From Sphyrna mokarran (lineage: Eukaryota), in assembly GCA_024679065.1 (NCBI GenBank), contig JAGIQG010000023.1, positions 9,920,001 to 9,984,000 on the forward strand: 64,000 nt of DNA. Reading direction: 5' to 3'. Both the position numbers and the translations under genes were made by a program. Positions 10,263 through 57,998 of the stretch are shown piece by piece; within the stretch, counting starts at the first letter, position 1, and each line of letters starts with the position of its first letter. The notes beneath the pieces were generated by a model that searched no databases, had not been told where the DNA came from, and was given only the letters and a program-made list of their open reading frames with translations.

Positions 10263-10571
10263 CTAACAATTAACAGTAGCATAAACTGTCATTTGAGAAT
10301 CTTGCGGAGTATCGAGTGATGGAGCATTTTTGTTGGGTTGGCTTTGAACACTGATGGTACTGTAGGTGATTGTGTCCGTGTTGTCAACTGAGTGCCTTTC
10401 CACCTCACCACTCAGTGCTGGTGATTTCTTTTGAAACTGCACTGCTGTATAAGTGACTTTGCTTTCATTATTATTGAACTGGACATTTCCCTCGCTGTGC
10501 ACTCCTGCGGAGATACTTTGAGTGGCATTTGTGTTTGCATAAACAGTACTCTCTTCCGCTGCTTCCAGTTG
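10263..10571 (-). CDS. Gene A exon 7, cytoplasmic signalling exon with TVYANT, VTYTAV, ITYSTI and TVYATV
   Basis: Acceptor ttttttttatattgtag, phase 0, 102 aa to TAG. Two ITIM-type motifs, one C-terminal ITSM (TxYxxV) and one YxN site. Confidence 0.88.
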   Translation of the reverse strand, partial: QLEAAEESTVYANTNATQSISAGVHSEGNVQFNNNESKVTYTAVQFQKKSPALSGEVERHSVDNTDTITYSTISVQSQPNKNAPSLDTPQDSQMTVYATVNC

Positions 10572-13500
10572 CTACAATATAAAAAAAAATAATCCAATTT
10601 ATTCCTGATGAACTTGAACAGTGATTTGTGCTGTTATGATGAAAAATATCTTTTTTGATTATTATGTTAGTTTATAAAACATTGAAATGTATTTATAGCA
10701 CAGAAACAAGCCATTGGCCCAACAGGTCAATGCTGGTGTTATTCTCCTCGATGAGGAGATGCTGGCATTGGACTGGGGTAAGCACAGAAAGAAGTTCATA
10801 CCTCCAGGGTAAAGTCCAACAGGTTATTTGGTAGCACATGCTTTCAAAATATCGCTCCTTCTTCAGACTTCTTCAAACTCTTCACTCACTTGAAGAAGGA
10901 GCAATGCTCCAAAAGTTTGTGCTGCCAGATAAACCTGTTGGACTTTAACCTGGTGTTGTGAGACTTCTTACTGTTATTCTCCCCATCAGCCTCCTCCCAT
11001 CCTTTGTCATCTAATCCTGCCAATTTATCTTTCTGTTCCTTTCTTCCTCATTTGGTAATCCAGCTTACCCCCCCAACAGATTTATGGTATTTGCTTCAAC
11101 TACTCTCTATGATAAGGAAGATTGAATAGTGGGCAAACATGTTGGGGGGTGGGGTGATCTCACAGGTTCATCATGCCAGTCAATTGGCATGGCCAGTAAA
11201 ATCACACAAGAAGCCAAAAATTGGGTTTGTGCACAGTTTTTTGCCTCTCATGATATTACTGGCCCTATTCTGTACGGTGTGAAACTGAAGTTTAATATTC
11301 ATGAACTTATCTTAATATTATTAATGAACCTGGGATGCCATCGTCCGGGTGCACTTGCCTTAACAGCTTCACCTGTGGAAGTCCTTACCGGTGAGTATCA
11401 TGTATGCTCCCCAGCAACAGGGACCCAACGTGATGGTCTTGCCAGTGGGACTGGAGGCCATTAAAGCCCCTTGGTGGTTGGGGCAGGAGCAGATAATGTC
11501 CCTTGGACAATGCCATCTTGGTACTGTCAGCCTAGTACCTCAGCACTGCCAGACACTCTCATAGTGCCCACTACATACCTAGGCATTGCCCACTGGACAG
11601 TGCCAACAAATGAGGCCAAAAGGGAAGGGATGGGGCCTGAACAGGAGGGCTGGGGCCTGAACGGGTTGGGGGGGGCATGGCATGGGGAGCTCCATTGGGG
11701 ATTACCAGGGCGGGTGTGGGGTTGGAAACAGGGCCACTAGGCCATGGGATGAAATTGGGGGCAGCGAACGGCTAGGTGGGATCCTGGGTGGCGATTGGGG
11801 GAATTGCAATCAAGGGTGGTGATCAGGTATTGCCACTGGGGGGTGGGAGTATGATCTTCAGGGGAATGGAAGGCGTGCCAGATCCTTAGTGCACTAGTAC
11901 TCTTGTACACAGCACACTGAGAGATCGGAGTGCAAGCACAATAGCCCCATCTATCAGTCAGCAACCAGCCACCTGGCATCAATAGACTGTTCATGCCCCC
12001 TATTGGCGAGAATGACAACTAGTCATTATTTTTCTAAGTGACATAAGATTGCATCTGGGCGCTTGCCCAAAAAATGGTTGCAATTCTTTCTCATTCTCAT
12101 GCACATTCAGCACTTAGATATTTTTGTTAAGATTGCCCCCTTTGAGTGTTCAGTTGTTGCAGAAAGAATTGCCACAAACAGCTGTGGCTCCCTGAGACAG
12201 ATGTTGTTCATGAATCAAAGACATACATGAGTTTCCAATTGTTAATGCAGTTCCAGAGTCTGATTTCTCACAGCGAAACTATTATTTCTGGCTATGTTGA
12301 TGTTGGATATGGTGATAATTTCTGCATCCATCACATCTGTACACCACATTGCTGTAAATTAGTCAGGGGTAAGGAATTCCTCAGCCTTTCTTTTATCTTT
12401 TCTAATGATCGATTGTGGCAAATTGAACGATTTCAATTCGGGGAAAACTAGGTAAGCACATGAGGGAGGTGGTGGCACAATGGTATTGTCATTGCTCTAG
12501 TAATCTAGAGGCACAGGGTGATGCTCTGGGTACTGGGTTCGGATCTTCCCATAGCAGATGATGAAATTTGAATTCAAAAATCTGGAATTAAAAGTCTAAT
12601 GATGGCCTCAAAACCATTGTTGATTGTTGGAAAAAAAAATCCATCTGATTCACTATTATCCTTTAGGGAAGAAAATCTGTCATCCTTACTCAGGTCTGTT
12701 TTACATGTGATTCCAGACTCAAAGCAATGTGGTTGACTTCTAACTGGCCTCAGAGATGGACAATAAATGCTGGCCCAGCTAGTGATGTGCACATCACGTG
12801 AATGAATAAAAATAAGACAGAGAGAGGAAAGCATGAGGAAATGCTGATAGAGTTAGAGGAATCAGTAAGACTAAATGACCTGTTTCTGTGTATATCTCAC
12901 CCAGTTCCACAAATTTCCAAACATTGTTCAGAGAATTCATACTTAATATTCTTACCCGATTATCATTTAGAGTCTTGTCTTTTCGATGAAATTCATTGCC
13001 ATTTGTATCTGAAAAGTTACAATTTTATTGTTGAAAGAACTGTAACAGGGATATTTAATATGCTTAAAATCTCTAGATTGATTGTGTCTTGCAGTGTGTG
13101 TAACATTAGATTCATCTACATTCATGTGAACCGCATTTGGTTTCCCTATATAGTTCAAAATTGGTTTTGGTTATTCTGCATAATGATCAGAAAGGTTGGA
13201 GATACTTTTCATCAGAGCAGAGCAGAAAACCTGCTGGTTATAATCGATTCTGATTTTCATCACAGTTATCCCTGCGTGGTGCTCTGTCAGATCACTGAAG
13301 GTGAAATTCAACCCCTATCTCCATGTGTTTAGGATTTTGTAGAATAAAAATCCTTTCAGTTCTACTCTGAAATGGAACTCTTGTCCTGTTGCGCTATCAG
13401 TGAAAGACTAAACAATACAGGGAAAAAATCAGTACCCAATTTAAACTCAAATTGGATTTACTTACACAGAGATAAAAGTAGGCTCTGTTTGTTGATTCAT

Positions 13501-16500: not shown

Positions 16501-19500
16501 CAGGATAGAGCCCACCCAGGGTAGGTCTTATGAGGAAAGACTAAGGGACTTGAGGTTATTTTCATTAGAGAGAAGAAGGCTAAGAGGTAACCTAATTGAG
16601 ACATATAAGATGATCAGAGAGTTAGATAGGGTGGATAGTGAGTGCCTTTTTCCTCGGATGGAGATGGATAATATGAGGGGACGTAGCTTTAAATTAAGGA
16701 GTGGTAGTTATAGGATGGATGTTAGAGGTGGATTCTTTACTCAAAGGGTAGTAAGGGCGTCAAGTTTAAGGGCATTCAAATGGTCAGTGGAAAGGCATAT
16801 GGATAGCATTGGAATAGTTTAGGTTACAGGGTCATAAAATTGGTTCCATTGGTTGGCGCAATGTTGAGGGCCGAAGGGCCTATACTGCACTGTAATGTTC
16901 TATGTTCTATGTTCTACTTCTCATAGCAAATGGAAAGATAAGTTCCAACCACAGGATGCACTTTTTCATAAGAATGGACAGTATGTGATGCCAACCCGGG
17001 ATCATAATCAAATCATTTACCAATACCATGATTTTCAGGGTCATTAAGGAGCAGAAAAGCTACCCTTAGCCTTGAAAAAGCTGTATAATAATTCTTGGGA
17101 ATGTTCAAGCTGCTCAGATGTCTCAGATGTTCCATTAAAAATGGAACAGAAAAGGAAGCAGAGTAAGGCTTATTTTGATGTTAAATCTGTTTAAGTCACA
17201 GGTAGATAGATTTTTAACCAATAGGGAAATTAAGGGTTTTGGGGAGCAGAGGGGTAAGTGGAACTGAACCCACTATCGGATCAGCCATGACCTTATTGAA
17301 TGGCGGAGCAGCCTTGAGGGGCCAGATGGCCTACTCCTGCTCCTATTTCTTATGTTTTTATGACAGTAAAGTGAATCCTATAGAGTACAAGATGGGACAA
17401 CTGATTATGCTTCCAGTTTACCAACCTGATACATTCTTATCCCCCAGATATTCTGGGCCTCACCCTATTCAGAGTAGTCAGCCTATTCAGAGTGTTCGGA
17501 GTAGTCATCAATATCGTGTGATGTGGGAAACATATTATCGAAATAATACCAGTGATATTTGCCAGTTTGATTCTAGTACATTGGATTCATGAATTTTGCA
17601 TTTAGATAATGAATCACTAAGTATTTGAGCAGGGAATTCATCAGATGGTTCATCAGTTCAGTCAAAGGATACACTAAGATTACAATATTAGGAGATGAGG
17701 AAAATCTTCTAGTTGATGTCCTAGATAGACAGAGAAGAGGAATGACATTGAGGATGATGATGAGGAGAATGATGAGGAAGTGAATGTTCAGGTTACAGGA
17801 AAGCAAGATTAGGGTCAGATGGAGGAACAAACAGTTGAACAGAAAGTTGAACCGAAAGTTGAACCGAAGGTTGAGCAAGCAATGGAGCCAGCAGTTGGGC
17901 AACTTTAAATGATGAGACGATTCTCTCCTGCTTAGTCCAGAGCTTAGGAGAAAGCTCTTTCTAATGCCAGGATAAAGTTGTTTCTAATGCCCTCCTCTGC
18001 TTGGTCCTGATGAGTAATCATGGTAGTGGTAGGTAGCAGTTGTTGCTCAGAACCCCTTTCCTCACCATTTCTCCCCCCCCCCCCGCCCCCTCCCCACCAC
18101 ATGTACTCATTCCATCTACTCCCCCGGCTCCTCTCCCACTCCACCCCCACCTCCATCCCCATCCCCACAGCCTCTGCTGTGATCGATAGCTATCTGTTCC
18201 AGCCTCTTCCTTTCCCCATGCCTTTCGGACAGATCCCTGGCCATTTTTTTAAACTTCAATCATTGCTCTCTCTTCTTTCTATTTATTTTCTTTTAAAAAA
18301 ACTCAGCAGCAATTTCCTATCTTGTTTTTTTTTAACTTGAGTTCCACTTCCTTTTTAAATCAAAATCACAGCTTTTGCCTCTGAGGACTATTTTCTCTTC
18401 ATTTTTTTTCCCTCACGGATTTCTAAACCTCAGACTGTACCAACCAACCCACGTTTGTTCTGCATCCATTCCCCAGGGTCTGGGAACAATCTCAACATAT
18501 CACTGAGTCTTATTTACTCAAAAACAGGCATTCGACTGAGTGTCATTTTTCTTCAGACTTCAATTAAAACTAAATACTCACAGGTTGACAATGTCATCAG
18601 AATGCATTTTATTCTCATTGCTGGTGTAATAATGCACTTGACAGACTTTGTCAGGAACACAAAGGGTGATTATTAACAAGAAAAAGCTGTATGGAGGCCA
18701 GCAGCTGCCCTGCACATCCCCACTCCCACTATTCCCCTCACCACACCACCATGGAGCAGCCTACAGACTACCCCAGCCTCTACCTGCCTACTACATGCCT
18801 ATAGTCTGCCTTCTGCCTAAGAGAGAGCTGTACCATAAAATCCCTGCAGTGCAGAAAAAGGCCATTTGGCCTCACTTGCTCTCAGTCCCAATTTGTCCCT
18901 CAAGATAGATGATCCTTGTGCTGCCCTTAAAGGGACAATCGCCACAAGAGTCAACTAATTATGGGTTGTGCATCAAGATTTTTAAAAAAGGATTAAAATA
19001 TGAACGGCCCCAAGCTTGTGAAAGCACATTCACTTACATCATGTGATGCCCAGGTCTTCCATTTTGAACACATCTAATTAGATGTGCAGAATAAAACAAT
19101 CATAGGATTCCAAACAAGTATATATTCTTTATTGTCTGCAAAAATTTACGACATGGAACGAACCAATTGAAGAGAAATAGAAACTCACCTTTGTTGACTT
19201 TCTTCAGGTACAACAGTAGAGAAACAGTGAGCATAATAAGAATGGCCCCCAGCACTGCGAGCACAATGTAAATCACACTGTGGTACAGAGAATAGAAAAG
19301 GGTCAGTGCAAGTTCACAACTGATCATAGCCATTTAGTTATAATTAAAGTAAGTTTTATACTGATAGAGCGTCTTTGAAGATTTCAGGACATCTCAAAAC
19401 ACTTTATGAGATGAAGGAATTTTAAAGTGTAGTTACTGCTGTCATAGAGGAAATGTGGCAGCCAATTTGCGCACAGCATGGTCACAGAAACAGAAATGAG

Positions 19501-22500
19501 AGCGACCAGATAATCTGCTTTTTTTTAAATAAGGGATAATTATTCACCAAGCCATCAGGGAAATGTCCTTTGTTTCTTCAAAGATTATCACAAGCTTTGT
19601 TTTATTCACCTGAGGGAACAAAGGGAAAGCAAAGGCCCAATGGTATTATTGCTAGACTATTAATCCAGAAACTCAGCAAATGTTCTAGGGACCAAGGTTC
19701 AAATCCTGCCATGGCAGTTGGTGGAATTCGAATTCAATAAAAAATATCTGGAATTAAGAATCTACTGATGATCATGAAACCATTGTCGATTGTCAGAAAA
19801 ACCCATCTGGTTCACTAATGTCCTTTGGGGAAGGAAATCTGCTGTTCCTTACTCAGTCTGGCCTACATGTGACTCCAGAGCCACAGCGATGTGGTTGACT
19901 TCCAACTACCCTCGGGCAACTAGGGATGGGCAATAAATGCTGGCCAGCTAGTGTCACCCGATGTCACACGAATGAATAAAAAGAAATGGGGCCTAGGTTT
20001 AACATTGCCTCCTCAAGGTGACACCTCTGACAGCACAGCCCTTCCTCAGGGCTGCACAGGAGTATCTGCCCAGATAATGGGGAGAATTCCATCCTCGCAG
20101 CTGTGTGTTTCTCAGAGGTACGCTGTTCATTGGTGACAGGATTCTGCAATCCCACCTCTGTCAGTGGGATTTTCATTGATGTCACCACATGTTACTTCTG
20201 GGTAAAGGGGTTGAGGGTGAGTGCGGAGTTGGGGAAGGAGGTGAGATTTTGTTAGTACTCAAAAGGACAGGAACTTTGACCTGATTAGTGGGATGGGAAA
20301 TTCTGATCAGGCAATGATAATGTCAGAGACATGTTTGAGGCATATCAAGTCTCACATGTTAGCCTGTGGGGAGTTCCTACTTGGGATACTCAATCGTAGT
20401 AAGAAGTCTCATAACACCAGGTCAGAGTCCAACCAATTTATTTGAAGTAATCTTACAAGCACGTTGGTTAGAATCTAACTTGGTGTTGTGAGACTTCTTA
20501 CTGTGTTTACCCCAGTCCAACGCCAGCATCTCCACATCATGAATACATTTCATTAATTATGTCCTATTTTCTGTGCTCCTGACTATGGTGGTGATGATGG
20601 GAGGTGGTTTGGTACAGTCATTCAAGATAAAAAATTAAGGAGCCTAAAGAGCTGAGTCAGTACTCTCCAGATGTGTATCCATCTCATTGTCAGACGTAGC
20701 TCTTTCAGGGCTTTGGGTTTCTCATTGTGCGTCCTCAGACAATGTCTTACACAATGCATGGGCCAGCTCAGCCTGCAAGTTCAGTCATGCCTCACAGAGT
20801 TGCAACTACAACAGTGGACACTGAGCTAAGCATTCAATAAAGGGTCAATAAAAATGTTCCAATATTGTTCCTGCCACAATAAAGGAAATGTCCCTAACCC
20901 TCCTGCCCCCATCAAGTGAGGTGTGCCAGCAATTTCACTCTGTGCTAATAAAATCTTGACAAATAATGATGACACACACATAAATAGAATGAAAACAGTG
21001 CAATGTGGACTATTCCCAGGTGAGATTTAATTTTCACTCGTGCTACCTCTCTACTCTTTGTGGATGACAAAGGACCTAGGTCGGAAATTTGTGGGGGTGA
21101 TGTACAGCCAGTCTGTCTGACCATGATGCTGCCTATAGATACGGCATCATTGACCGATAGTGGGCTTCACCAATATAAAGCTTTCTCTTGCTATTAAATT
21201 ACAACTGTTTTGCAGGCTCTCCCTAGCACATAAAATTTTAACCACAATTGAATGTGAAAATGTAAAAAAAGAGAGACAATTCCGATTACGACATTGGGAA
21301 TGAAACCCTGTTGACAAAAATCTTGCTGTTGTATTTTTCTTATGCAAACTGTACTAATCAATTCAGCAGCAATGAGTACATTTTACCTTGTGAATCGTAG
21401 GGTTTGGTTTTGATTCTCATTGTGATGTATGTTTGTATTTGTGGATACTGTTGAAGAATCTGGACAAGAATATTCAGGTCCTGTTAAAACAGGGGAAATA
21501 ATGTTCAGATTCACTTCATTGTCACTTCTAGCTAATCAAGAGAGCATCAATGTCAGCTGGAACCTACAGGAAGAGCCTAGATGATATAATGGATTTATAT
21601 GATTTAATTTCTCTCTTTCCTATAGCAATTAGAACTCATGCTGATACCTGACTGAGATTCATTCTTATGATCATTTCAGTTTCTTTCTCACATCTGAGAG
21701 TTGTGCTACAGAGTTCGTACTGAGTAGTTAAACAGTGGATTACAGTCCAGATATATTCTTTTGTACCATGTGAAAACATAGACCCAGATTTTTTCCTTGA
21801 TGGTAGGCTGTACTGTTATGGCAAAAATCCTTCAAAAAGATCTCAGCACACTTTTGGGGAGGTTTGGCACGTTTTTAGGATTGCTAAAATTAAAAATGAT
21901 GATACACATTTTATGGTCAAATGCATTGGAACTGTCAAGCTGTCAAAGAACTGTCCAGCACTCAGTTGACATAGGCTAGGGCACAGGGACTGTTTGGGGG
22001 ACAGAATGAGGGCTGGAGGGCTGCTTTTTGGTTTAAATTATTTTCCTATTTGCTTAAGCACAAATGCCTTCCACTCAGCCCTCCTCCCATCCAGCAATTT
22101 TCACAACAATTCTGGGCAAGGGCTGCAGGTAGTCATTTTTGAAGGTCAGGTTTGCAGAGCACACCCCACTCCATCTGCAAAGCCCCCGCCATTCTCCTGG
22201 TGTCTGCACACCCGGCCCAGAAGCAAAAATCCAGGCCATAAAGTTGCAGGTAGAGAGCTGGCCTCTGCTCCCAATGGAAAATGTATTTCTGGGGACCCAA
22301 TAACCATGATCCTACTCTGGAAAGATGTCCTTGAGGGAAAAGGAATATCAGTTGGGCATTGACTGCAAAAACAAATCAAGCAGCTGATATTTGTGTTAAA
22401 AGAATGCTCTGTTAAAAGAATGTATTTATTCAAACAATTTACAGATAAATGCTATCTTATCATACAAAACAGTCACCTGCTAAAATCGACAATGATCATT

Positions 22501-34870: not shown

Positions 34871-34900
34871 AGAAGGGGAAGGAGATAGCAGGAAGTTAAA
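34871..34900 (-). promoter_or_regulatory. Putative proximal promoter of gene A: ETS/PU.1-type (CAGGAAGT) and GATA (AGATAG) motifs
   Basis: Adjacent AGATAG (34883-34888) and CAGGAAGT (34889-34896) about 110-120 bp upstream of the ATG, a typical leukocyte promoter arrangement. Short motifs, so chance occurrence is possible. Confidence 0.35.
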
Positions 34901-42855: not shown

Positions 42856-43020
42856 TGATTTGATTTGATTCATTACTGTCACATTTATTGGTATACAGAG
42901 AAAAGTATTGTTTCTTGCGCATTAAACAGACAAAATACATCGTACATAGAGATGGAAATGAGGCAGTGTTACAGTCATAACTAGGGTGCAGAGAAAGATC
43001 AACTTATTGCGAGGTAAGGT
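42856..43020 (-). mobile_element. Rex1/Babar 3' end
   Basis: (GATTT)n tail and reverse complement of 24995-25168. Confidence 0.75.
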
Positions 43021-44343: not shown

Positions 44344-44355
44344 TTAACACGTCAC
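44344..44355 (-). CDS. Candidate terminal coding mini-exon of gene B (VTC*)
   Basis: Good acceptor (ccactttctaatttcag) followed by GTG ACG TGT TAA TGA in phase 0, 1.5 kb past the TM donor. No other support. Confidence 0.3.
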   Translation of the reverse strand: MTC

Positions 44356-44377
44356 CTGAAATTAGAAAGTGGAATAG

Positions 44378-44810
44378 ACTTGTGTTTCTTTGTGATTTTT
44401 ACCACTATCTAACATCTCTTCAGTGCTTTACAGCCAGTGAAGTATTTTTGATGTTTATTCACTGTTGCAATGTAGGAAATGCGATAGCCAATTTGTATGC
44501 AGCAAGTTCCCCCAAAATGCATCGTGTCGCTGGTCGCAGAATCAGATGTTTTAATGTCATTTGAGGATTTACCCCAGAACAGCAGGGATAATTCCTCTCC
44601 TCTTCTGGGAAAAGTGGCCTGCAGTCTTTTCAATCCACTCGAGCAGCGTGATGGGGCCCGAGAGTTCCAAGTCTCGCCTCAAAGACGGCACCAATGACAG
44701 TGTGGCACTCTCTCAGTACTGCCTTGGATTGTCAGCTTTTGGTTTTTGCCCCCAGAGTAAGTGAACCTTGTGACGCAGAGGGGACAGCGCTACCAACAGA
44801 GCCACAGCTG
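44378..44810 (-). mobile_element. Deu-domain SINE (SacSINE1/AmnSINE1-like)
   Basis: tRNA-like head (TGGCTCTGTTGGTAGC) on the minus strand and CAGTACTGAG...CACACTGTC...GGTGCCGTCTTT core. Confidence 0.6.
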
Positions 44811-45798
44811 ATACACAAGTTGTAATTAAAGAGGTCAGTTATTCCAGAAAGTAAGAGTGATTTGGGTCCTCACTAGATTTTTTTCATAATGTATGAATAT
44901 TCACATGGCTAACTTCTAAAATTTGAAAAAGTGGACAACCTCTATTCAGAATGGCCAAACCTATATCTCTCTATGACCTGATTAAAAGGACCTTTTTGGC
45001 AGTATCAAAACCATTTCATCTTGTTATCTCTGAAGTGACCCTAAGGAATCCCAGTGAGCTGCATTGTCCAAATTCAAGGGGAACCATATAAAGACCATTC
45101 AAGCTTCTTAAGACAGACCTAAGACACTCTTCATCAGAGTCAAAGTGGAGAGATGGGAATCATAAAACACTGCCATTCCTCCCCCATCCATGCCCCCACT
45201 CCACCCATTCCCCCTTGGTGCTGGAAGTAGTAATATTACCTTGCGAGACTGCCATCATTCCATCTACCAAGCAGTAGTATCCCAGTAAAGCTTTTCTGTC
45301 TGGGCTTGACTACCAGGACCCATCTACACTGTATCTAGTGGAAAAAAATGTATCACTTCAGGGACAGCTGAGGATCAATCTTTGCTCTCAGATAGTCTAA
45401 AGATGGTGTTGGAAGAGCTGTCTCTGAATATTTTCGAGGTAGGGGTTGCTAGGTTCTTGGTAAGCAAAACAGGTGAAATGTTATTTGGGGCAGTTTGGAA
45501 TGTGGAGTTGAGAATACAGTCTGATTATCCATGATCTTATTGATGGTGGAGCAGGCTTGAGGGCGGAATGGCCAACTTCTGATTCTAATTTATATCTTTA
45601 TATGTATGCATATTCATATGAATAAGGAATCTACTTGATTTTCCTACTTGACATCAGTAATGACTGAAAACAAACTCATTATTGGCTGGAAAATATTTTG
45701 ATTCATGCTGACAACATGAATGGATTTATATAAATGAAGTTTTTCTTTACAATATCTGTGATCAATATCTTTGAAAGAATTGGTAGAGGTGGAACAAT

Positions 45799-48700
45799 TC
45801 AGGTGATGTTCATAGCACCTACCTTAGATTTTTCTGTATACCATGTGACGGTAACAGCACAAATCACCAAGAGAGTAAAGAGCCCCCAACAAATCAGATT
45901 CCAGGTAACGTAACTGAACAAAATGGTAGAAATACAAAGTCATTTGCAGGAAATGAGAATTCATCATGTTTGAAGCATTAAGCTGCTATTTTGCTATACA
46001 GGTTGAATTTATTCATAAGGCCATGCATTCTCAATCTTGTCCCTTGCCTAAGGTATGATGGTCTTCAGGTAAAATGACCACCAGTCAGCTCCCCTTCAAA
46101 GGGAGGTCATCTGAGACTATCATAGCTTTACCTTTAATCAAGATGAGTAATGATAACAGCATCATCTGAAGGAGACCAAACTGGAAACATTCACTTCTTC
46201 CTCTCATTTCCCAGCACCCTAAATTGCTCCTTCATTGGGAGGATTAGAACATCATGACCCAATTCCTGTCACCATTTCTATTCTGATAAATTCTGCTCTG
46301 AAGCAGTGAATTATTAGAAACAATTAAGCTAAAACTCGGTACCATTGATTCTCATTTGAAAAGCAATGCCAATAAAACAGCTACAATGGGAACCTTGTAC
46401 CTTTCACTGGTGAATGTAGATCCCGAAGATGTGGTTAATGTTACTGTTGATATGGTTTTAAAATCTTCACAAGAATATTCACGTCCTATTGAGACAGAGG
46501 GAATACATTTAGATTTATCCGATTCTCACCCAGTCAACTAAGAAAGCATTCTGCTCAAATAGAACCTCAGTATTTGGGAGGATGGATTTGGGTGTTTTAA
46601 CTATTTCCTTTCTGGTAGCAAGAAAATGACATGTACCAGAGACCCATTTTGCTGCTGATTTCTTATTCATCCCATATTTGAGAGTTGTTGGTATAACAAT
46701 AGTGGGTCTCTGTGCCGTAAGTTCCCCTTTCCGCCTCAGCTGTTTTCCTGGAGGATTTCAATCTGTCCTGTCCACCATACCATGATCTCATCACTGCATT
46801 ATGCCGGGGGGCCATATTTAAACTGCAGCCATGTGCGCACCTCAGTGAGTCCAATTGTCTGAAGACATTGGCCCTGTACTGCCGTGTGTACTGAACTCCA
46901 TTGCTGATGTTGGATTTGACAATGCAGGCACAGACACTCCCCTAGCCAGCCCTGCAAAACTACACCGTTCACATGAACCATGCCGGAGACTGATCCCAAC
47001 CTGAATGAAGACATTGCAAAGGGGGTGCGAGTGCATGATTGTTCCATGGCAAAGATTCATAAGGCGATTGTACCACTGGCCCATCATTCTATTGTTCTGG
47101 AAACTGCCTCCCTCAAAACATTTATTAATTTTGTAGTCTGTGCCTGAGGGGTAAAAAGTTCAGGAGCATTTGATGGCCCGTTCATGCCTCTGCATTCCTT
47201 GAGTGGGAAGATAAGCTAAAGGTCCGAGCATAAAATTGAAGTTTTAATCACAAGTAGGCTTACATTAACAATGCAATGGTAAACTAATGGGGCTGAAGGT
47301 AGATAAGTCCCCGGGACCGGGTGGAATGCATCCCAGGCTTCTGAAAGAAATGGCAAAGGTGATAGCAGATGTCTTTGTAATTATTTATCAAAATTCACTG
47401 GACTGCGGGGAAGTGCCGGAAGATTGGAAAACAGCTAATGTTATGCAGCTGTTTTTAAAAGGTAGCAGATAAAAGGCAGGGAATTATAGGCTAGTTAGTT
47501 TAACGTCTGTCGTTGGAAAAATGCTTGAATCGGTGATCAAAGAAGAAATAGCGAGGCACCTAGAAAAGAATGGTTTGATCAAGCAGACGCAACACGGATT
47601 CATTAAGGGGAAATCGTGTTTGATGAATTTATTGGATTTCTATGAGGATGTGACTATTGCGGTAGATAGAGGAGAACTGGTGGATGTGGTGTTTTTAGAT
47701 TTCCAAAAGCTGTTTGAGGAGATGCCTCACAAAATATTGCTGCAAAGGTTAGGATGCGAGGAGTTGGGGGTAAGGTATCAGCATGGATAGAGGATTAGTT
47801 GTTTAATAGGAAGCAGAGGGTAGGAATCAATGGGTGCTATTCTGGTTGGCAGTTGGTGACTAGTGGAGTGCTGCAGGGATCGGTGTTGGGGCCTCAACTG
47901 TTTACCATATACATAGATGATCTGGAGGAAGGGGCTGAGTGTAGGGTAACAAAATTTGCTGATGACACGAAGATAAGTGGAAAAGCAAATTGCGTGGAGG
48001 GTGTGGAAAGTCTGCAGAGAGATCTGGATAGGTTGAGTGAGTGGGCGAGGACTTGGCAGATGGAGTATAATGTTAGCAAGTGTGAGGTTATCCACTTTGG
48101 TAGAAGTAATATTAGGAGGGATTATTATTTAAAAGGCGAAAAGCTGCAGCATGCTACGGTGCAGAGGGACCTGGGGGTCTTTGTGCACGAATTGCAAAAA
48201 TACAGTCTGCAGGTGTAGCAGGTAATCAAGAAGGCAAATGGAATATTGACCTTTATATCTAGGGGGATAGAACATAAAAGTAGGGGGGTCTTGTTGCAAC
48301 TGTACAGTGTGCTGGTGAGGCTGCAGCTGGAGTACTGTGTGCAGTTTTGGTTGCCACATTTGCAGAAGGATATATTGGCCTTGGAGGGAGTGCAGAGAAG
48401 GTTCACGAGGCTGTATGCCAGAGATGAGAGGGTTAGCCTCTGAAGAGAGATTGAGTAGACTAGGTTTGTACTCATTGGAGTTTAGAAGGCTGAGGGAGGA
48501 TCTTATAGAGACAAATAAGATAATGAAGGGGATGGATAGGGTAGAGGTAGAGAGAATCCTCCTGCTTAGAAAAGATAACAGGACTAGAGGGCACTGCCTT
48601 AAAAGGGGGGGGGGAGGAGTTTAGATTGGAGTTGAGGAGGAATTTCTTCATTCAAAAGGTGATGAATCTTTGGAATTCTCTGCCCATTGAAGTGGTGGAG

Positions 48701-51700: not shown

Positions 51701-54700
51701 ACCAAGAACCTGGGTTCAATTGCTGGCTTGAGTCACTCTCTGTGCAGAGTCAGCATGTTCTCCCCATGTCTGCATGGGTTTCCTCTGGGTGGCCTGATTT
51801 CCTCCCACAGTCCAAAAGATGTGCTGGTTAGATGTATAGGCCATGCTAAATTCTCCCTCAGTTTACCCAAATGGGTGCTGGAGTGTGGAGACTAGGGGAT
51901 TTTCACAGTAGCTTCACTGTGCTGCTAATTTAAGCTTACTTGTGACATAATAAATGTAGTTTTAAACTTTAAACTCCCAGTGGAAATGGTGGGTGTTGGA
52001 TTTGGGAGCTGGGCTTCAGGAGTCAGGGGTGGCTTTAATTTATTCACACTTTAATCTCCATTGTCATGCTTTTCTCCTCATAACTAAAATGTTTCAGCCC
52101 AAGTTTTTCTTAAGTTTAATTCTTCCAGCTTAGACCTGAGAGGTTATATTTGCTAGGATTGTTTTTTAATCAAGCAATGTAAGCATCGTTGATAAGGTAA
52201 GAATCTGTCTCCCATGTCTAATTGCTTTTAAACTTGCTTGGCCATTTCAGAGGATATTTAAGTGGCAATCACATTGCTGTTGGTTTGAAGTCATGTGTCA
52301 GTCAGCCCAGGTAAAAATGACAGATCTCAAGAATAAAGAACAGCTAAAATTACAGCACAGGAACAGGCCTTTCGGGCCTCCAAGCCTGCACCGACTGACT
52401 TAACTAAAACCCCCTACCTTCCGGGGACCATATCCCTCTATTCCCATTCTATTTGTCTGTTACAGTCACCATCATATTTGCTTCCACTACCTTTTTTTGG
52501 CAATGGGTTCCAGGCACCCACCACCCTCTGTGTAAAAGATTTGCCTTGTACATCTCCTTTAAACCTTGCCCCTCACAACTTAAACCTCTGCCCCCTTGTA
52601 ATTGATTCTTCCACCTTGGGAAAAAAAACTTCTGATTATCCACTCTGTCCATGCCCCTCATGACCTTGCCAACTGCTGATAGGTCCCCCTTAACCTTCAT
52701 TGTTCCAGTGAGAACAAACAAAGTTTCTTCAACCTCTCCTCATAGCTATTTCTTACCCTAAAGGGCATTAGGGAACAATTGTTGACATCTTCATGGTTTT
52801 AATTACTGATCATGAAATCTTACACTGCAGAAGAAGGCCATTCAGCCCATCGAGTCTGTACTGACCACAATCCCATCCAGGCTCTGTGCCCATAACATTA
52901 CGCATTTACCCTAGCTAGTTCCCCTGACACAAAGGGGGAATTTAACATGGTAATCCACTTAACCAACACATCATTGGACTGTGGGAGGAAACTGGAGCAC
53001 CCACACAGGAAACCCACACAGGCACGGGAAGAATGTGCATGCTCCACACAGACTGTGGCCCAAGAGAGGAATTGAACCTTGATCCCTGGGGCTGCGAGGC
53101 AGCAGTGCCACCATGCCGCCCATTTGGTAATATTAGCTTTCAATTCCCAATTTATTAATTAATTGAATTCAATTCCATCAGCTACCATGGTGGGATTTGA
53201 ACCCATGCTCCTTGAGCATTAGCTGGGCCTCTGGGTTGCTGGACCAGTGGCATTAGCAAAATGCACTTTCACTCAGGGCAGGCTCAGTTGGCTGAACAAC
53301 AGATTTGTGGTGCAAGGTGATGCCAGCAGCGCAGGTCCAATTCCCAGACCAGCTGAGGTTATTCATGAAGGCCCCACCTTCTCAGCATTGTCCCTCCCCT
53401 GAGATGTGGTGACCCTCAAATTAAATCACCAGTGGTCAGCTCTCCCCATTAAAGGGGGGAGTAGCCTCTGGTCATCTGGGACCACAACGACTTTAACTTT
53501 GCACAATCTCCTAAATGGGCATTTAGATCTATGCAGCTCAGCAATTAAAAACTATTTTCATTTATTGGGATGATTGAGTTGTAATATTTATTCATATTCT
53601 GGGGATATTTTTTGACCCTGTCATTTTCCATGAAAAATTAAGATCAAATATTTTTCAGGTTGATAATTAAAATTAACTAGCAACTGGTATAAATGGACAT
53701 TAATCATAAAAATCATTAACCTCAATGTTAGTTTAAAGTAACACTTACCAATGTTGCTTTGTATCACATAACTGCAATTCCCAGTTGTATTTAAAACCAA
53801 TACATTAACCATTTCACTGTATTTTTCTCCCTGGTTATTTGAGGCTGTGCAGTAATATTGATGATGTCGCTGTGTGAAGGATTGACAATGTAGATCCAGT
53901 TTATTGGTGTCAGAGATCTTTGAATCTTCAGGCGGGGTCTTTTCATACCATGTGTACTGAATGGGAAGTGATCCCTGGACAGACTCACAGGAGACGGACA
54001 CTGAGCCCCCAGAACATGAGGCATTTGATCGTGTTAAAAATCTAAGTTCAGGATTTGTGGTTTCTGTGGGGAAAAAAACATTCAGAAACTGACTGACATT
54101 CTAAAAATCAAACACTCTGTGAATTTCATCCCTTCAGCATCTCAGCCAGGGGCAGCCATGTTGGAATCTCACCAGCACATCCACATCTCCACGGGCAAAT
54201 GCTTAATCGGGATTTGTATGTGGGAAGTGCTGGGCAAAAAGTTAGAAATGCCAGGAAAGTCAAGTTTGTGCTGAATTTAACAGCAAAACCAGATTAGAAC
54301 TCTCCCAGAATTGAGAGACTGGCTGGAGTTTGAGTAGAAAAGTCTGTCGTGTAAAATTTGGAATTGGTAGGAGTGTGGGCCCAGAGGACAGTAGCGAGGA
54401 GGGAATCAAGAAGGCTTTATTGGTTAGGGCAGAATTGGCCAATCAAGGAATGTTGGGGGGGGAGGTGCAGTGATGGTAAAATGCATTTGCCTGGGAGCCA
54501 AGATGAAGCTTCTCTGTGCCTTCGGAACCACAATCCATGCTGGAAAAGCTGCTGGACCTATCAAATCCCATTGCCATGAACAGATTGGATCCAGAGTTTT
54601 GTGTTGTACTGCTGTGTGTGCTGAACTCCATCACTGATACCATAGTTGGCAGCTCAGATGCAGATGTTCCTCTAGCCCATCCTGCAAGACTGCACCATTC

Positions 54701-57700
54701 GCTTGAATCATGGGACAGACTAACCTGAATGTGACTCATGTCATGCTGAGGTTATGTTAGTGAGGGCAGTAAATTCACCATGTGGGGATGATCCCAATGG
54801 CAGGGATGATGATAAGATGCAAATGGATTAAAATTATGTTCTCGCCATTTGACTAATCAAGACTAATTTTTGACCATTCTGCCATATTTTCTGTTCACGA
54901 TTTCAAGCGCGCCCATTACCAACTCCACACTGTTCCTCTTCTGGTCACTGCTGTGTTGTTGCAGCCCGAACTGGATAACTGTCAGCCAATCAGATGGAAC
55001 TCTCCAAGACAGGACTCCCTCTGGAGCAAGGGCCGAACCTCTTGCCCAATAACAATCAACACACATTTGAGTGTTAAATGACATCATGCTATTCCAAAAC
55101 TTCAGACATCTGGATCCTGTTAAATTCTGTGGATTGATTCTATTTTGTTATATTTGAGGGCATTACACCATCGCTAACAGCTAGCTCTTAACTATTTGTC
55201 ATTTCGTTTTAATCTAAAAGCAAACATCTGACAGTGTGACAAATTGATCAGTCCATGAATTGGATTTGTATGAGGCAGATTTCCCCAACTCTGACCTCTG
55301 GGGGGAGTTAGTGGCCTGACAACACCAGGTTTAAGTCTAACCAATTTATTTGATAGTAAACTCACAAGCTTTCGGGATTTGTCCCTTCGTCAGGTGAAGG
55401 AGAGTTCTGGCCTTAGACAGAGCATATAGCAGCATAGACAGTTTACAGATTACTGATTAGAATGCGAGTCTTTGCCACTAACCTGCTATTCAAATCTTAA
55501 AGATGCCAACAATGTGAGTGGAAAAAGCATTAAGCACAGGTTAAAGAGATGTGTATTGTCTCCAGACTGTACAGTAAGTGAGGTTTTGCAAACCCAGGCA
55601 AGTCATGGGGATTACAGATAGTGCACCATGAACCCAAGATCCCTGTTGAGACCATCCTCATGTGTGTGGAACTTGGCTATCAGACTGTTCCAAGTTCCGC
55701 ACACGAGGACAGTCTCAACAGGGATCTTGAATTCATGTCGCACAATCTGTCACACCTATGACTTGCCTGGGTTTGCAAAACCTCACTTACTGTTCTGTCT
55801 GGAGACAATACACATCTCTTTAACCTGTGCTTAATGCTTTTTCCACTCACGTTGTTGGCATCTTTAAGACTTGAATAGTAGGTTAGTTGTAAAGACTCAT
55901 ATTCTAATCAGTAATCTGTAAACTGTCTATGCTGCTATGTGCTCTGTCTGAGGCCAGAACTCTCCTTCACCTGATGAAGGGATGAATGCCAAAAGCTTGT
56001 GAGATAACTATCAAATAAATTGGTTGGGCTTAAACCTGATGTTGTCAGACTTCTTACTGTGTTTACCCCAGTCCAATGCCGGCATCTCCACATTGGGAGC
56101 TAGTGGCACATAATATTGTCACTGGTCTAGTAATCCAGCAAACCCAGGATCATGCTCTGGGGACCTGAGTTCAAATCCTGCCAGTAGCGGATGAATTTGA
56201 GTTCACTAAAAATCTTGAATTGAAAGTCTAACAATGACCATGGAACAATGATAAAAACCCAACTGGTTCACTAATGTCCTTTAGAGAAGGAAATCTGCTG
56301 TCCCACTGTCCTTATCTTGTCTGGCCTATGTGTGACTCCAGATCCAGAGCAATGTGGTTGAATCTTAAAATGCCCTCATGGGTGGGCAATAAATGCTGGC
56401 CTTGTCAATGATGCCCACATCCAATGAACAAATGAAAAAACAATCTGCCCGAGTCTGCGTTGCAGTGGACCCTCGGGATATCACAGTTGTCAATTCCACA
56501 GCTGTACCATCCTGCATCTCCTGAGCGAAGATCCTTCATAGTGACAACAAAGTCTCCTTGTGTCTTGTTATCTGTGATTGATATTCTGCCATTTTGCCGA
56601 TTTGTTGCTGCTATAACAACACACTGGCGAGTCCAGCCCTGACACCAATATTTCACATTTGACCGGTACCACACATCATAGTGACAATCTATTGTGATTG
56701 CTCTTCCCACAATTCCTCTTACTTCCTTTTTTGCCCACAATGCACCTGAAACTGAGGAGACAACATTTCAAAAATTTCCTCCCAGAGAAAAGCATGGCCT
56801 GAATTTTTTGCTTGTAGTGTGTATGTGTGTGTGTGCACTCAGCGAGTCTGGATACGTGTATGAAACATCAGCCCCAAAGCACAGTTTCACACTGGCTAAA
56901 TTGATACCTATGGCCTCCAGCTATCCTCCAAGGCCACCGATCCCGTGCACCATCACCGAAGTTGGCAATCTTCACCTCCTGAAATCCCCAAATCCATCCA
57001 AGATCTGAAAATCCCTCCTGCCAGGATTTAATGTGTGTGTCACATCCCATCCCTACTGCCTACACCATCTATCAGGTCAGATCAAGGATCTCTTTGCTGC
57101 TGTCATCTCCTCGGGGTTGCTTACCAACTAACTGCAAGTGTGACCTGTCAATTAGGTTTGTTTCTCGGTCTGGAACCTCTTGATGATGGGGGAATGAATG
57201 GGAGAAGAGCCACCGTGAAGCTGTCTTCAGGGTATTGTTGACTTGTGAAGAATATCAGTGTTAAAATGATACCGAGAGTGTCAGGGCAGCACGATCTCAC
57301 ACACACACAGCTCGGCCCCCAGACACATTTTTTTTTTAATATGAACCCTGACCTTTCATTCTGCCCTGCATTGGGGTTGCAGCTAAAATGTAAAGGTCAC
57401 CTGACCAATTGGGCCGCCTGCCAATTGTAAAGACAGACAGACAACTTAAAGTTCTGGATAATTGGTGTTTAATGAATTTAAATTGAATTTTGGATGGCTG
57501 CAGGTGCATTTCCAACTTGCTCATGTGCCTGGCGACTGAGATATTGGGTGAAGGCATATTGCCATAGGGGTCTGATTTTACCCACATTCGGGTAGGGCAC
57601 GTGTCTGATCTTTATACATAAAATTCTGGCCACTGATAGGAGATTTCAGCAGAGAGTAATAAAGATAACCACTGAGAATAACGTACCGTTAGATATTTGT

Positions 57701-57998
57701 AGTTCTACGTCATACAATGGATCGAGGCCGGGTGTTTCAATTCCACAGCTGTACCATCCTGCATCTCCTGAGCAAAGATCCTTCATAGTGACAACAAAGT
57801 CTCCTTGTGTCTTGTTATCTGTGATTGATATTCTGCCATTTTGCCGATTTGTTGCTGCTACAACAACACACTGGCGAGTCCAGCCCTGACACCAATATTT
57901 CACATTTGATCGGTACCACACATCATAGTGACAATCTATTGTGATCGCTCTTCCCACAATTCCTCTTACTTCCTTTTTTGCCCACAATGCACCTGAAA
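45799..57998 (-). CDS. Gene B: paralogous CD300/pIgR-like receptor, activating-type TM and short tail, 5'-incomplete; join(57998-57687,54063-53749,46485-46401,45913-45823...)
   Basis: Four exons homologous to gene A exons 2-5, with intact GT-AG sites and the same internal phases (1,1,2). No leader exon found in the window. The 3' end is either read-through (KSKVGAMNIT*, stop at 45799) or a spliced mini-exon. Confidence 0.8.
45823..45913 (-). CDS. Gene B transmembrane exon (YVTWNLICWGLFTLLVICAVTVTWYTEKSK)
   Basis: Acceptor ttttgttcag in phase 2 matching the stalk exon; hydrophobic helix; donor AAG|GTAGGT, phase 0. Confidence 0.82.
46401..46485 (-). CDS. Gene B stalk exon (GREYSCEDFKTISTVTLTTSSGSTFTSE)
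   Basis: Acceptor tctcaatag, donor AAG|GTACAA, phase 1-2. EYSC motif as in gene A; Thr/Ser-rich. Confidence 0.82.
47270..48888 (+). mobile_element. CR1 LINE, 5'-truncated, RT through 3' tail; V-SINE fragment follows (48888-49088, -)
   Basis: KSPGPGGMHPRLLKE, QHGFIKGKSCL, GVLQGSVLGPQLF, KFADDTK; stops and frameshifts. Confidence 0.92.
49610..50275 (+). mobile_element. CR1 3' fragment with an internal inverted duplication
   Basis: SYEERLDKL..FSLE text; 50150-50225 is the reverse complement of about 49882-49955. Confidence 0.8.
51668..51970 (+). mobile_element. HE1-like V-SINE, alternative tail
   Basis: A/B boxes, V core; tail as at 7396-7680. Confidence 0.85.
52325..52745 (-). mobile_element. 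CR1 3' fragment
   Basis: VMRGMDRVD...QRVVGAWN text plus CR1 tail. Confidence 0.8.
52815..53120 (-). mobile_element. HE1-like V-SINE
   Basis: Head, V core and tail on the minus strand. Confidence 0.8.
53749..54063 (-). CDS. Gene B IgC2 (FCRL-type) exon
   Basis: ETTNPELRFL...VSVSCESVQGSLPIQYTWY...QYYCTASNNQG...NCSYVIQSNI. 315 nt, phase 1-1, acceptor ccccacag, donor G|GTAAGT. Confidence 0.92.
55316..56093. mobile_element. Penelope-like element 3' ends fused as a palindrome (arms 55316-55676 and 55690-56048)
   Basis: Arms are reverse complements around a 13-nt spacer. Each encodes a GIY-YIG-type C-terminus (LIAKFHTHEDGLNRDLGFMVHYL*) and has a hammerhead-like motif. Confidence 0.85.
55362..55397 (-). 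ncRNA. Minimal type I hammerhead ribozyme motif (Penelope type)
   Basis: UCAC-CUGACGA-A-GGGA-CAAA-UCCC-GAAA-GC-UU-GUGA: stem I UCAC/GUGA, intact CUGAnGA and GAAA cores, stem II GGGA/UCCC, palindromic AAGCUU stem III. Confidence 0.65.
56098..56440 (+). mobile_element. tRNA-derived SINE (second family)
   Basis: Matches 12465-12812 and 19635-19982. Confidence 0.8.
56490..56751 (-). pseudogene. Truncated tandem duplicate of the gene B V exon (lacks G strand and splice donor)
   Basis: 56490-56776 matches 57737-58023 with only 4 substitutions counted. Homology stops right after WYSCGI; the frame then runs into unrelated/SINE sequence and stops at 56405. Confidence 0.88.

What the first reader, a model, noticed from the sequence alone, without database searches (positions are those of the whole stretch)
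10263..57998. Tandem inhibitory/activating paired-receptor system built from a CD300/pIgR-type V domain plus an FcR-like C2 domain
Seen: two same-strand paralogues share the V-C2-stalk exon series and phases but have unrelated TM/tail exons. A has an uncharged TM and four tyrosine motifs; B has a YxxxNLI[R/C] TM and at most about 10 cytoplasmic residues. Known: this opposite-signal pairing is the hallmark of CD300, LILR/PIR, SIRP and fish LITR/NITR clusters; in mammals CD300/pIgR V domains and FCRL-type C2 domains are in separate gene families; modular domain immune-type receptors (MDIRs) of skate mix Ig domain types. Inference: this is an elasmobranch MDIR-like cluster whose V+C2 hybrid could be an Ig-binding (pIgR/FcmuR-like) or lipid-binding (CD300-like) receptor pair, and it is likely annotated only as generic 'CMRF35-like'.
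Basis: partly seen in the sequence, partly recalled or inferred. Interest (0 to 1): 0.85.

Follow-up and report, generated by a model that had tools for sequence, protein, structure and literature searches.

The report
Shark MDIR immune-receptor gene pair
Two neighbouring shark genes belong to the already described MDIR family of immune receptors: one is an intact inhibitory type, and the other is an activating type that has lost the membrane arginine such receptors need.

Summary
On the minus strand lie two paralogous genes, each with a V exon, a C2 exon and a stalk exon in the same splice phases, followed by unrelated TM exons.

- **Gene A (34775-10263):** a complete 7-exon model of 409 codons. 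It has an uncharged TM and a tail with two ITIMs, one ITSM-like motif and one YxN motif.
- **Gene B (57998-45823):** V, a truncated V duplicate, C2, stalk and a TM exon. No leader for it lies in the window, and its last exon was not found.

This is not a new hybrid. Both genes are members of the modular domain immune-type receptor (MDIR) family, first named in the clearnose skate. Their exons are 49-58% identical to skate MDIR2 and MDIR5. Relatives occur in sharks, rays and chimaera under miscellaneous automatic names.

The "activating" reading of gene B is only half right. Its TM is of the family's Arg-bearing type, but it has Cys where all 29 homologous TM segments I hold have Arg. The two V domains share only 54% of residues, so A and B are neighbours of opposite lineage rather than a matched pair.

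No RNA evidence was obtained. The scan's first readers noted related MDIR-like clusters elsewhere in this genome. Verdict: an ordinary new member of a known kind.

The parts
34739..34775 (-). Gene A leader exon (12 codons plus 1 base, phase 0 to 1, donor GTGAGT)
   Evidence: Signal-peptide scan. tblastn with white-shark P0021 gives 68% over 22 aa, E 5e-4. The 12 residues equal the N-terminus of Mustelus asterias P0207. It is the only leader of this type in the window.
29228..29551 (-). Gene A V exon (CD300/pIgR-type V-set Ig domain)
   Evidence: Pfam V-set, E 2.2e-13. PDB: CLM-1/CD300f 2.5e-15; mouse pIgR best single domain 50 bits. 79% identical to Mustelus P0207 and 49% to skate MDIR2. AG/GT, phase 1 to 1.
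26299..26622 (-). Gene A C2-set Ig exon, with extra conserved cysteines
   Evidence: 54% identical to skate MDIR2, E 9e-35. PDB best match FCRL5. AlphaFold2 model with mean pLDDT 86.8 has a C2-set fold; CD22 d3 gives Z 9.1. Conserved Cys columns in alignment A1. AG/GT, phase 1 to 1.
21387..21480 (-). Gene A stalk exon (Cys-containing, Ser/Thr/Asn-rich), phase 1 to 2
   Evidence: blastp fragment match to B's stalk, 12/22. tblastn with P0021, 52% over 29 aa, E 0.002. Splice sites.
19189..19277 (-). Gene A transmembrane exon, no charged residue in the membrane span, phase 2 to 1
   Evidence: tblastn: P0025 63% over 30 aa, E 1.8e-6; P0021 54% over 35 aa. Translation and splice sites.
12956..13008 (-). 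Gene A juxtamembrane cytoplasmic exon (53 nt, phase 1 to 0) that restores the frame between the TM exon and the last exon
   Evidence: Local alignment with the homologues' juxtamembrane peptides; best score 43, with Heterodontus P0189. AG acceptor, GTAAGA donor, phases fit.
10263..10571 (-). Gene A last exon: tail with YxN, two ITIMs and an ITSM-like motif, then the stop codon
   Evidence: Motifs by script. 60.6% over 99 aa with P0021 and 46.6% over 103 aa with P0025. 34% over 80 aa with the skate MDIR2 tail, E 9e-9.
57687..57998 (-). Gene B V exon (V1)
   Evidence: Pfam V-set, E 2.6e-10. 58% identical to skate MDIR5 V domains, E 6e-38. AG/GT, phase 1 to 1. It has Cys where the V2 copy has Arg.
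56486..56776 (-). Truncated duplicate of B's V exon (V2). The acceptor is kept, but the last part of the domain and the donor are missing.
   Evidence: 98.3% identical over 291 nt to 57734-58023. The reading frame leaves V homology after the F-strand Cys and runs to a stop near 56405.
53749..54063 (-). Gene B C2-set Ig exon
   Evidence: 87.7% nt and 75% aa identity to A's C2. tblastn with family proteins down to E 3e-40. AG/GT, phase 1 to 1.
46401..46485 (-). Gene B stalk exon, phase 1 to 2
   Evidence: Same phases and the same Cys-containing start as A's stalk.
45823..45913 (-). Gene B TM exon of the family's Arg-bearing type, but with Cys (TGT, 45891-45889) in place of Arg. Six residues follow the membrane span. 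Phase 2 to 0, donor GTAGGT.
   Evidence: 70% identical to catshark P0038 TM, E 7e-13, with Cys opposite Arg. 40% identical to skate MDIR5 TM. 29 of 29 homologous TM segments have Arg. A DNA contig of run X1 agrees with 0 differences over 45534-46700.

Best explanation
The window holds two adjacent members of the cartilaginous-fish MDIR family. These are type I membrane receptors whose ectodomain is a module of one CD300/pIgR-type V domain and one C2-set domain.

Gene A is an intact MDIR2-type inhibitory receptor. Inferred mechanism: ligand binding by the V-C2 ectodomain, phosphorylation of the ITIM/ITSM tyrosines by Src-family kinases, and recruitment of SHP-1/SHP-2/SHIP-type phosphatases that damp activation.

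Gene B descends from the family's second lineage. In that lineage an invariant Arg in a W-x-x-x-R-W membrane motif and a short tail imply pairing with an acidic-TM ITAM adaptor. In this genome the Arg is Cys, so B most likely cannot recruit an adaptor. It is then a signalling-dead decoy-like form or a decaying gene.

Shown here: exon structure, paralogy, family membership, motifs, and the Arg-to-Cys difference. Inferred: all signalling steps, the ligand, and whether either gene is expressed.
For: - Exon models with consistent AG/GT sites and phases.
- A's seven exons sum to 1230 nt, which is 409 codons plus the stop. Homologues are 405-425 aa.
- Family membership: 776 proteins match A's C2 at E<=1e-3, and the closest are cartilaginous-fish V-C2 proteins. 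Named relatives include Rostroraja eglanteria MDIR2 and MDIR5 and Callorhinchus MDIR2.
- Pairwise identity to skate MDIRs is 49-58% for the Ig exons, and the tail and TM are homologous too.
- Of the 102 family proteins I hold, 28 have the Arg-type TM, 34 have two or more ITIM/ITSM-like motifs in the tail, 1 has both (a 1059-aa model, probably two fused genes) and 41 have neither.
- Arg stands at the critical place in 29 of 29 homologous TM segments, where B has Cys.
- In other species, activating and inhibitory forms share near-identical ectodomains within a lineage: Heptranchias P0025/P0165 and orectolobiform P0194/P0199.
Against: - No transcript evidence. No listed run is on record as RNA. 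The one guessed RNA run of the same organism (X12, 98 million letters) has no contig on B's stalk or TM exon.
- B's first and last exons were not found, so B may be incomplete or part of a larger gene.
- The Cys rests on the assembly and one DNA run, which may be the same individual. It could be an allele.
- A polar Asn and Cys in the TM might still allow some partner.
- A's first Tyr motif is not a canonical ITIM.
- The ligand is unknown.
- The C2 tree is poorly resolved: 2 of 33 inner branches are starred.
Confidence: 0.75

Rival explanations
1. A and B are a working inhibitory/activating pair. B still signals, through the remaining polar TM residues (Asn, Cys), a disulphide or a co-receptor, and shares ligands with A.
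For: B's four exons are all open with good splice sites. Its TM is 70% identical to an annotated catshark activating-type receptor. The C2 domains of A and B are 75% identical. Paired forms are the rule in this family.
Against: 0 of 29 homologous TM segments lack the Arg. V domains, the likely ligand-binding part, are only 54% identical and fall in different V lineages: A's V groups with Mustelus P0207 at 98 SH-aLRT, and B's V is elsewhere. There is no RNA support.
Confidence: 0.12
2. Gene B is a pseudogene or gene fragment, left over from duplications in a fast-turning-over cluster.
For: - No leader in the 6 kb upstream inside the window. A LINE with a 422-aa reverse-transcriptase ORF sits there.
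- A truncated V copy with an intact acceptor lies between V1 and C2 and would bring in a stop.
- The invariant Arg is lost.
- V1 has an unpaired Cys where its own copy keeps Arg. Both changes are C-to-T at CpG.
- The terminal exon was not found.
Against: No stop or frameshift in any of the four exons, and all splice sites are intact. The leader may simply lie beyond the window's end. Short terminal exons are hard to find by similarity.
Confidence: 0.35
3. B's V1-C2-stalk-TM exons are the 3' end of a larger multi-module (V-C2)n gene whose first exons lie beyond the window.
For: Multi-module relatives exist: skate MDIR5 is V-C2-V-C2-TM with the same TM type, and Mustelus P0001 has six C2 stretches. 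The scan's first readers noted V-C2 modules 21 kb beyond the window's end (untested). B has no leader in the window.
Against: The gap to those modules is more than 21 kb and their strand is unknown to me. V1 starts with the residues that follow a leader in single-module relatives, although internal V exons of P0001 start the same way. So this does not decide the question.
Confidence: 0.2

Closest known systems
Modular domain immune-type receptors (MDIR) of the clearnose skate, especially MDIR2 (inhibitory, V-C2) and MDIR5 (V-C2-V-C2 with an Arg-bearing TM)
   Same: Same domain module, same stalk/TM/tail types, and 49-58% identity in the Ig exons. The tail and TM are homologous. It is a multigene cluster that holds both signalling types.
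   Different: The species is a shark whose nearest annotated relative is Mustelus asterias (79% in A's V). Gene B lacks the TM Arg. There is an extra truncated V exon.
CD300 / CMRF35-like molecules (mammals)
   Same: The V domain is of the same subtype: CLM-1/CD300f E 2.5e-15, CMRF35-H 6.6e-14. The family logic is the same: ITIM forms and charged-TM forms side by side in a cluster.
   Different: By recalled knowledge, CD300 proteins have a single V domain and no C2 domain. Their activating members use Glu or Lys in the TM, not the W-x-x-x-R-W motif. Lipid binding was not tested here.
Polymeric immunoglobulin receptor (pIgR)
   Same: V-domain similarity: best single domain 50 bits against mouse pIgR D5. 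Many relatives are auto-named 'pIgR-like'.
   Different: pIgR is a chain of V-type domains only, with a long sorting tail (recalled). Here the domains alternate V-C2 and the tails are ITIM-bearing or short. No Ig or J-chain binding is shown.
FCRL / CD22-type C2-set receptors
   Same: C2 exon: FCRL5 is the best PDB sequence hit. CD22 d3 and d6-7 are the best fold hits, Z 9.1 and 8.9. The nearest bony-fish proteins are auto-named CD22-like or sialoadhesin-like, at 24-36% identity.
   Different: Those families have no CD300-type V domain at the tip. The similarity is at the level of the C2-set class and is not specific to FCRL (FCRLA Z 7.9, within about 1 Z of many others).

Membership tests
MDIR (modular domain immune-type receptors) | Significant sequence similarity of the Ig domains to the named skate MDIR proteins | tested here: met
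   A V against MDIR2: 49%, E 3e-35. A C2 against MDIR2: 54%, E 9e-35. B V1 against MDIR5: 58%, E 6e-38.
MDIR (modular domain immune-type receptors) | Ectodomain built from modules of different Ig subtypes (a CD300/pIgR-like domain plus a C2/I-type domain) | tested here: met
   Pfam V-set for the V exons and weak Ig_3/Ig_2 for the C2 exons. PDB matches. C2-set fold. The family definition is recalled from the abstract of Cannon et al. 2006, which is not held.
MDIR (modular domain immune-type receptors) | Family members carry either ITIM tails or a positively charged TM residue | tested here: inconclusive
   Gene A meets it: two ITIMs plus an ITSM-like motif. Gene B has the TM type but Cys in place of Arg.
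MDIR (modular domain immune-type receptors) | Multigene family of cartilaginous fishes | tested here: met
   Of the names I looked up, relatives at 45% identity or more in C2 come only from sharks, rays, skates and chimaera, apart from P0017, which has no name (10 proteins, 76). Two genes lie in this window. Further clusters were noted by first readers (untested).
CD300 family | Single V-type Ig domain followed directly by stalk and TM (recalled definition) | tested here: not met
   A C2 exon lies between V and stalk in both genes.
pIgR | Tandem V-type domains only, and binding of polymeric Ig (recalled definition) | tested here: not met
   The architecture is V-C2. Ig binding is not testable with these tools.
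FCRL | Ectodomain made only of FCRL-type C2/Ig-like domains (recalled definition) | tested here: not met
   The N-terminal domain is a CD300/pIgR-type V domain. The C2 similarity to FCRL5 is modest per domain (26 bits) and not specific by fold.
Paired activating/inhibitory receptors (functional class) | Closely similar ligand-binding domains joined to opposite signalling parts | tested here: inconclusive
   C2 is 75% identical but V only 54%. The inhibitory half is present. The activating half lacks its Arg.

The most novel reading that the evidence does not exclude
The Arg-to-Cys change in gene B is not decay but a functional switch. A receptor of the activating lineage would have become adaptor-independent: a neutral-TM decoy that competes for ligand without signalling, or one that couples through the new Cys.

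More broadly, the V-C2 MDIR module could be the cartilaginous-fish stand-in for the pIgR/FcR-type Ig receptors that one survey reported missing from sharks (PMC4016189, passages read).
Probability: 0.1. Interest if true: 0.6.

Novelty: new member of a known kind. Interest (0 to 1): 0.25.

Why it matters
It gives a clean, exon-level model of an inhibitory MDIR gene and of an Arg-less activating-type neighbour in a shark genome.

It shows that the CD300/pIgR-type V plus C2 module is the conserved building block of a family spread over sharks, rays and chimaera. That family is currently hidden under many unrelated automatic names.

It also bears on an older statement that sharks have no pIgR or FcRL homologues (PMC4016189). 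Sharks do have both domain types, joined in one family. Whether any member binds immunoglobulin remains open.

As a discovery it is modest, because the family and its paired logic were described in 2006.

Tried and rejected
- **Direct TM-to-last-exon splicing in gene A.** Rejected. The phases clash and the other frame stops after about 33 codons.
- **Two earlier candidates for A's missing exon.** A 14-nt micro-exon near 18337-18350 was considered and dropped for weak splice sites. A splice-site scan gave nothing like the homologues. The real exon came from alignment with homologues.
- **An earlier C2 donor.** I first took a donor just after the last Cys codon. It was replaced by the GTAAGT donor 27 nt further on, which homologues support.
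- **An earlier V acceptor.** The acceptor first taken for the V exon was moved 6 nt upstream to fit the homologues.
- **Gene B's last exon.** A pattern scan found nothing. The local-alignment candidates near 45585 and 44883 score low (30 and 25, against 37 for an unrelated top hit) and lack an in-frame acceptor. Left unresolved.
- **Gene B's leader.** Not found in 58030-64000.
- **ITIM-like strings between B's TM exon and A's leader.** Two open fragments on that strand hold two such strings each (41468-41623 and 42700-42807). Three such fragments occur on the other strand, one of the two lies in a hyper-abundant repeat, and none has family homology. I took them as chance.
- **Fold searches.** Foldseek against PDB gave no match at E<=0.001. 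The wide structural search gave a generic C2-set answer.
- **Reads.** The single read-laying run showed no RNA contig on B's exons. The rows shown did not include the Cys codon for the related species X3.
- **Literature.** Searches found only PMC3031540 mentioning MDIRs. The original MDIR paper and a 2010 review are not held, so what I say of their content is recalled. Supplementary files were not consulted, and no claim here depends on them.
- **Joined step.** All searches were made exon by exon. I built, typed and searched no joined coding sequence or protein of either gene. Only exon lengths were added up.

Full report
**What is there**

The window is vertebrate DNA of about 40% G+C with many LINE and SINE fragments. 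Both genes of the finding lie on the minus strand. A self-comparison finds two exon pairs in the same order. The C2 exons and their flanks are 87.7% identical over 316 nt (26362-26676 against 53806-54114, E 1e-100). The V exons are 75.1% identical over 406 nt (29183-29584 against 57640-58030). Pfam calls the V exons V-set (E 2e-13 and 3e-10) and gives the C2 exons only sub-threshold Ig_3/Ig_2/Ig_C17orf99 matches.

The exon borders, all AG/GT, are as follows.

| Exon | Gene A | Gene B |
|---|---|---|
| leader | 34775-34739 | not found in the window |
| V | 29551-29228 | 57998-57687 (V1) |
| C2 | 26622-26299 | 54063-53749 |
| stalk | 21480-21387 | 46485-46401 |
| TM | 19277-19189 | 45913-45823 |
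| cyt1 | 13008-12956 | - |
| last | 10571-10263 | not found |

V, C2 and stalk have the same phases in both genes (1-1, 1-1, 1-2), and both TM exons start in phase 2. The TM exons themselves are unrelated.

**Gene A**

The leader was found by a signal-peptide scan. It is matched by homologues, and its 12 residues equal the start of Mustelus asterias P0207.

The TM exon ends in phase 1 and the last exon begins in phase 0. Read directly together they give a different frame that stops early. All full-length homologues have 14-18 extra residues at this point. Aligning those peptides to the intron found a 53-nt exon at 13008-12956 with a good acceptor, a GTAAGA donor and phases 1 to 0.

The seven exons add up to 1230 nt, which is 409 codons plus the stop. 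Homologues are 405-425 aa. I added lengths only.

The TM has no charged residue. The last exon has TVYANT (YxN), VTYTAV and ITYSTI (ITIM) and TVYATV (ITSM-like). It is 60.6% identical over 99 aa to the tail of a white-shark relative and 34% over 80 aa to the skate MDIR2 tail (E 9e-9).

**Gene B**

V1, C2, stalk and TM are open and well spliced.

- *TM exon.* It is 70% identical (21/30, E 7e-13) to that of catshark P0038, an annotated 304-aa V-C2-stalk-TM protein, and 40% identical to skate MDIR5. In both alignments B's Cys stands opposite Arg.
- *The Arg is invariant in the family.* A pattern with free residues between the two Trp picked up 30 segments in 29 of the 242 proteins I held. Twenty-nine have Arg. 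The thirtieth (P0131, a 999-aa protein, at residue 233) is not a homologous TM. So 0 of 29 homologues lack the Arg.
- *The neighbouring residue.* It is Asn in B and Asp in seven shark sequences, but it varies across the family (K, D, T, N, S, M, E). I give it little weight.
- *Support for the Cys.* The Cys codon is TGT at 45891-45889. A DNA contig of run X1 (organism A) covers 45534-46700 with no difference (table 8). This run may be the assembly's own sample, so it is not independent. A related species (X3) covers the exon, but the rows shown did not include that place.

Five further points weigh on B:

- No leader lies in the 6 kb upstream inside the window. A LINE with a 422-aa reverse-transcriptase ORF does.
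- A 291-nt copy of the start of the V exon, 98.3% identical to V1, lies between V1 and C2. It keeps the acceptor but loses the end of the domain and runs into a stop.
- V1 has Cys where that copy keeps Arg (TGC against CGC).
- The roughly 15-residue terminal exon seen in homologues could not be found.
- If the TM exon's donor is not used, seven more codons and a stop follow.

No homologue of the ITIM tail lies between B's TM exon and A's leader. tblastn with 21 family proteins hits only eight places in the window, all of them exons named here.

**Expression**

No listed run is on record as RNA. The one guessed RNA run of the same organism (X12, 98 million letters) has contigs only on repeats in 41000-46700, and depth 0 on the stalk and TM exons. 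This neither supports nor refutes transcription.

**What family it is**

A search of 1.84 billion representative proteins with A's C2 exon gave 776 hits at E<=1e-3, 200 at 1e-10 and 38 at 1e-30. The close hits (45-88% identity) are V-C2 proteins. Their names, looked up for 10 proteins and listed for 76, show the following:

- Species: Mustelus, Scyliorhinus, Carcharodon, Cetorhinus, Hemiscyllium, Chiloscyllium, Rhincodon, Heterodontus, Heptranchias, several rays and skates, and Callorhinchus.
- Named family members: 'Modular domain immune-type receptor 2' and '5' of Rostroraja eglanteria (P0208, P0171) and 'modular domain immune-type receptor 2' of Callorhinchus (P0164).
- Other automatic names: pIgR-like, Fc receptor-like 2/5/6, CMRF35-like 1/4/5/8, A33 antigen-like, CXADR-like, allergin-like.

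Skate MDIR2 has exactly gene A's layout. Skate MDIR5 is V-C2-V-C2 with B's TM type. Identities to these are 49% (A V), 54% (A C2) and 58% (B V1). Both genes are therefore MDIR family members.

The species is a shark. The nearest annotated relative is Mustelus asterias, at 79% in A's V exon, and A's V groups with it at 98 SH-aLRT.

**Domain types**

- *V domain.* It matches CLM-1/CD300f (E 2.5e-15), CMRF35-H, pIgR domains (best single domain 50 bits), then NKp44, TREM2, TLT-1 and, far weaker, FcmuR. The CD300/pIgR-type label is right.
- *C2 by sequence.* FCRL5 is the top PDB entry, but mainly by summing six domains; the best single domain scores 26 bits (i-E 8.8e-5). SYG-2, CD22 d6-7 and FCRL4 follow. 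The nearest non-cartilaginous proteins are bony-fish poly-Ig proteins auto-named CD22-like, sialoadhesin-like, hemicentin-like or CEACAM5-like, at 24-36% identity.
- *C2 by fold.* An AlphaFold2 model of A's C2 exon (30-row alignment, mean pLDDT 86.8, pTM 0.80) found no Foldseek match at E<=0.001. In the wide structural search it matched CD22 d3 (Z 9.1), CD22 d6-7 (8.9), NTB-A, amphioxus IgVJ-C2, CD146, CEACAM5, SYG-2 and FCRLA (7.9), all within about one Z unit.

So the domain is C2-set of the FCRL/CD22 class. 'FcR-like' is acceptable as a loose label but is not specific.

**Is it a pair?**

At family level the paired logic is clear. Of 102 family proteins, 28 have the Arg-type TM, 34 have two or more ITIM/ITSM-like motifs in the tail, 1 has both (a 1059-aa model, probably two fused genes) and 41 have neither. 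In quick trees, activating and inhibitory forms of one lineage sit together. Heptranchias P0025 and P0165 share a clade at 96* for V. Orectolobiform P0187/P0194/P0195 and P0199 share one at 99* for V and 97* for C2. These trees are short (107 columns), quick-search and weakly resolved, so I use them only for these starred groups.

In this window the match is looser. C2 is 75% identical, but V is only 54% and from different V lineages. A and B are neighbours of opposite lineage rather than a matched pair. B also lacks the residue that makes its lineage 'activating'.

**Literature and novelty**

[quoted passage not shown] It cites Cannon et al. 2006, Immunogenetics 58:362. That paper is not held. 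From recall, its abstract describes modular Ig ectodomains, ITIM forms, a charged-TM form and similarity to CMRF35, pIgR, TREM, NKp44 and FcR homologues.

PMC4016189 (passages) reported no PIGR, FcRL or FcR-gamma homologues in sharks. The present family shows that both domain types are there, but this was already implied by the 2006 work.

Searches found no open paper on shark MDIR gene pairs. The original paper lies outside the library, so I do not claim absence from print.

The scan's first readers noted further MDIR-like clusters, Arg-TM genes and giant (V-C2)n genes elsewhere in this genome. I did not test those.

**Verdict**

- Observation: confirmed.
- Interpretation: partly supported.
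- Novelty: a new member of a known kind.

The only unusual point is the Arg-to-Cys change, together with the other signs of decay in gene B. This is more likely loss of function than invention.

Noticed in passing
window 56486-56776 against 57734-58023: A very recent partial duplication of gene B's V exon: 98.3% identity over 291 nt, with 4 mismatches and 1 gap. It keeps the acceptor and lacks the donor. If spliced in, it would bring in a stop near 56405.
   Followed up: partly
window 57687-57998 (V1) against the V2 copy: V1 has TGC (Cys) where its own duplicate has CGC (Arg), in the stretch before the F-strand Cys. Like the TM change (TGT where the family has Arg), it is a C-to-T change at a CpG. 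It adds an unpaired Cys.
   Followed up: partly
window 42719-43100: A hyper-abundant repeat. Summed contig depth is 2-4 x 10^5 in the two DNA-like runs of two species. It is also the only part of 41000-46700 held well by the two guessed RNA runs.
   Followed up: no
window 59883-61151 (minus); also 47799-48218 (plus): LINE reverse-transcriptase ORFs: RVT_1 E 5e-33 for a 422-aa ORF and 1e-11 for a 139-aa ORF. The first lies just upstream of gene B's V1, where a leader would be expected.
   Followed up: partly
window 9855-10158, 28738-28902, 31003-31150, 51668-51862, 52816-53108, 59091-59174: Copies of a short interspersed repeat, 75-87% alike, in both orientations. One copy abuts gene A's stop codon. 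It has no Pfam match.
   Followed up: no
A1 alignment; window 26299-26622 and 53749-54063: Besides the canonical Ig pair (C26, C72), the C2 exon has an invariant Cys (C60) and two nearly invariant ones (C17, C98). The stalk begins with a further conserved Cys. They probably form extra disulphides. Their pairing was not worked out.
   Followed up: no
window about 44840-44885 (minus): A short open stretch ending in a stop loosely resembles the 15-residue terminal exon of batoid activating-type MDIRs. It has a low score (25) and no in-frame AG acceptor. It may be a relic of B's last exon or chance.
   Followed up: partly
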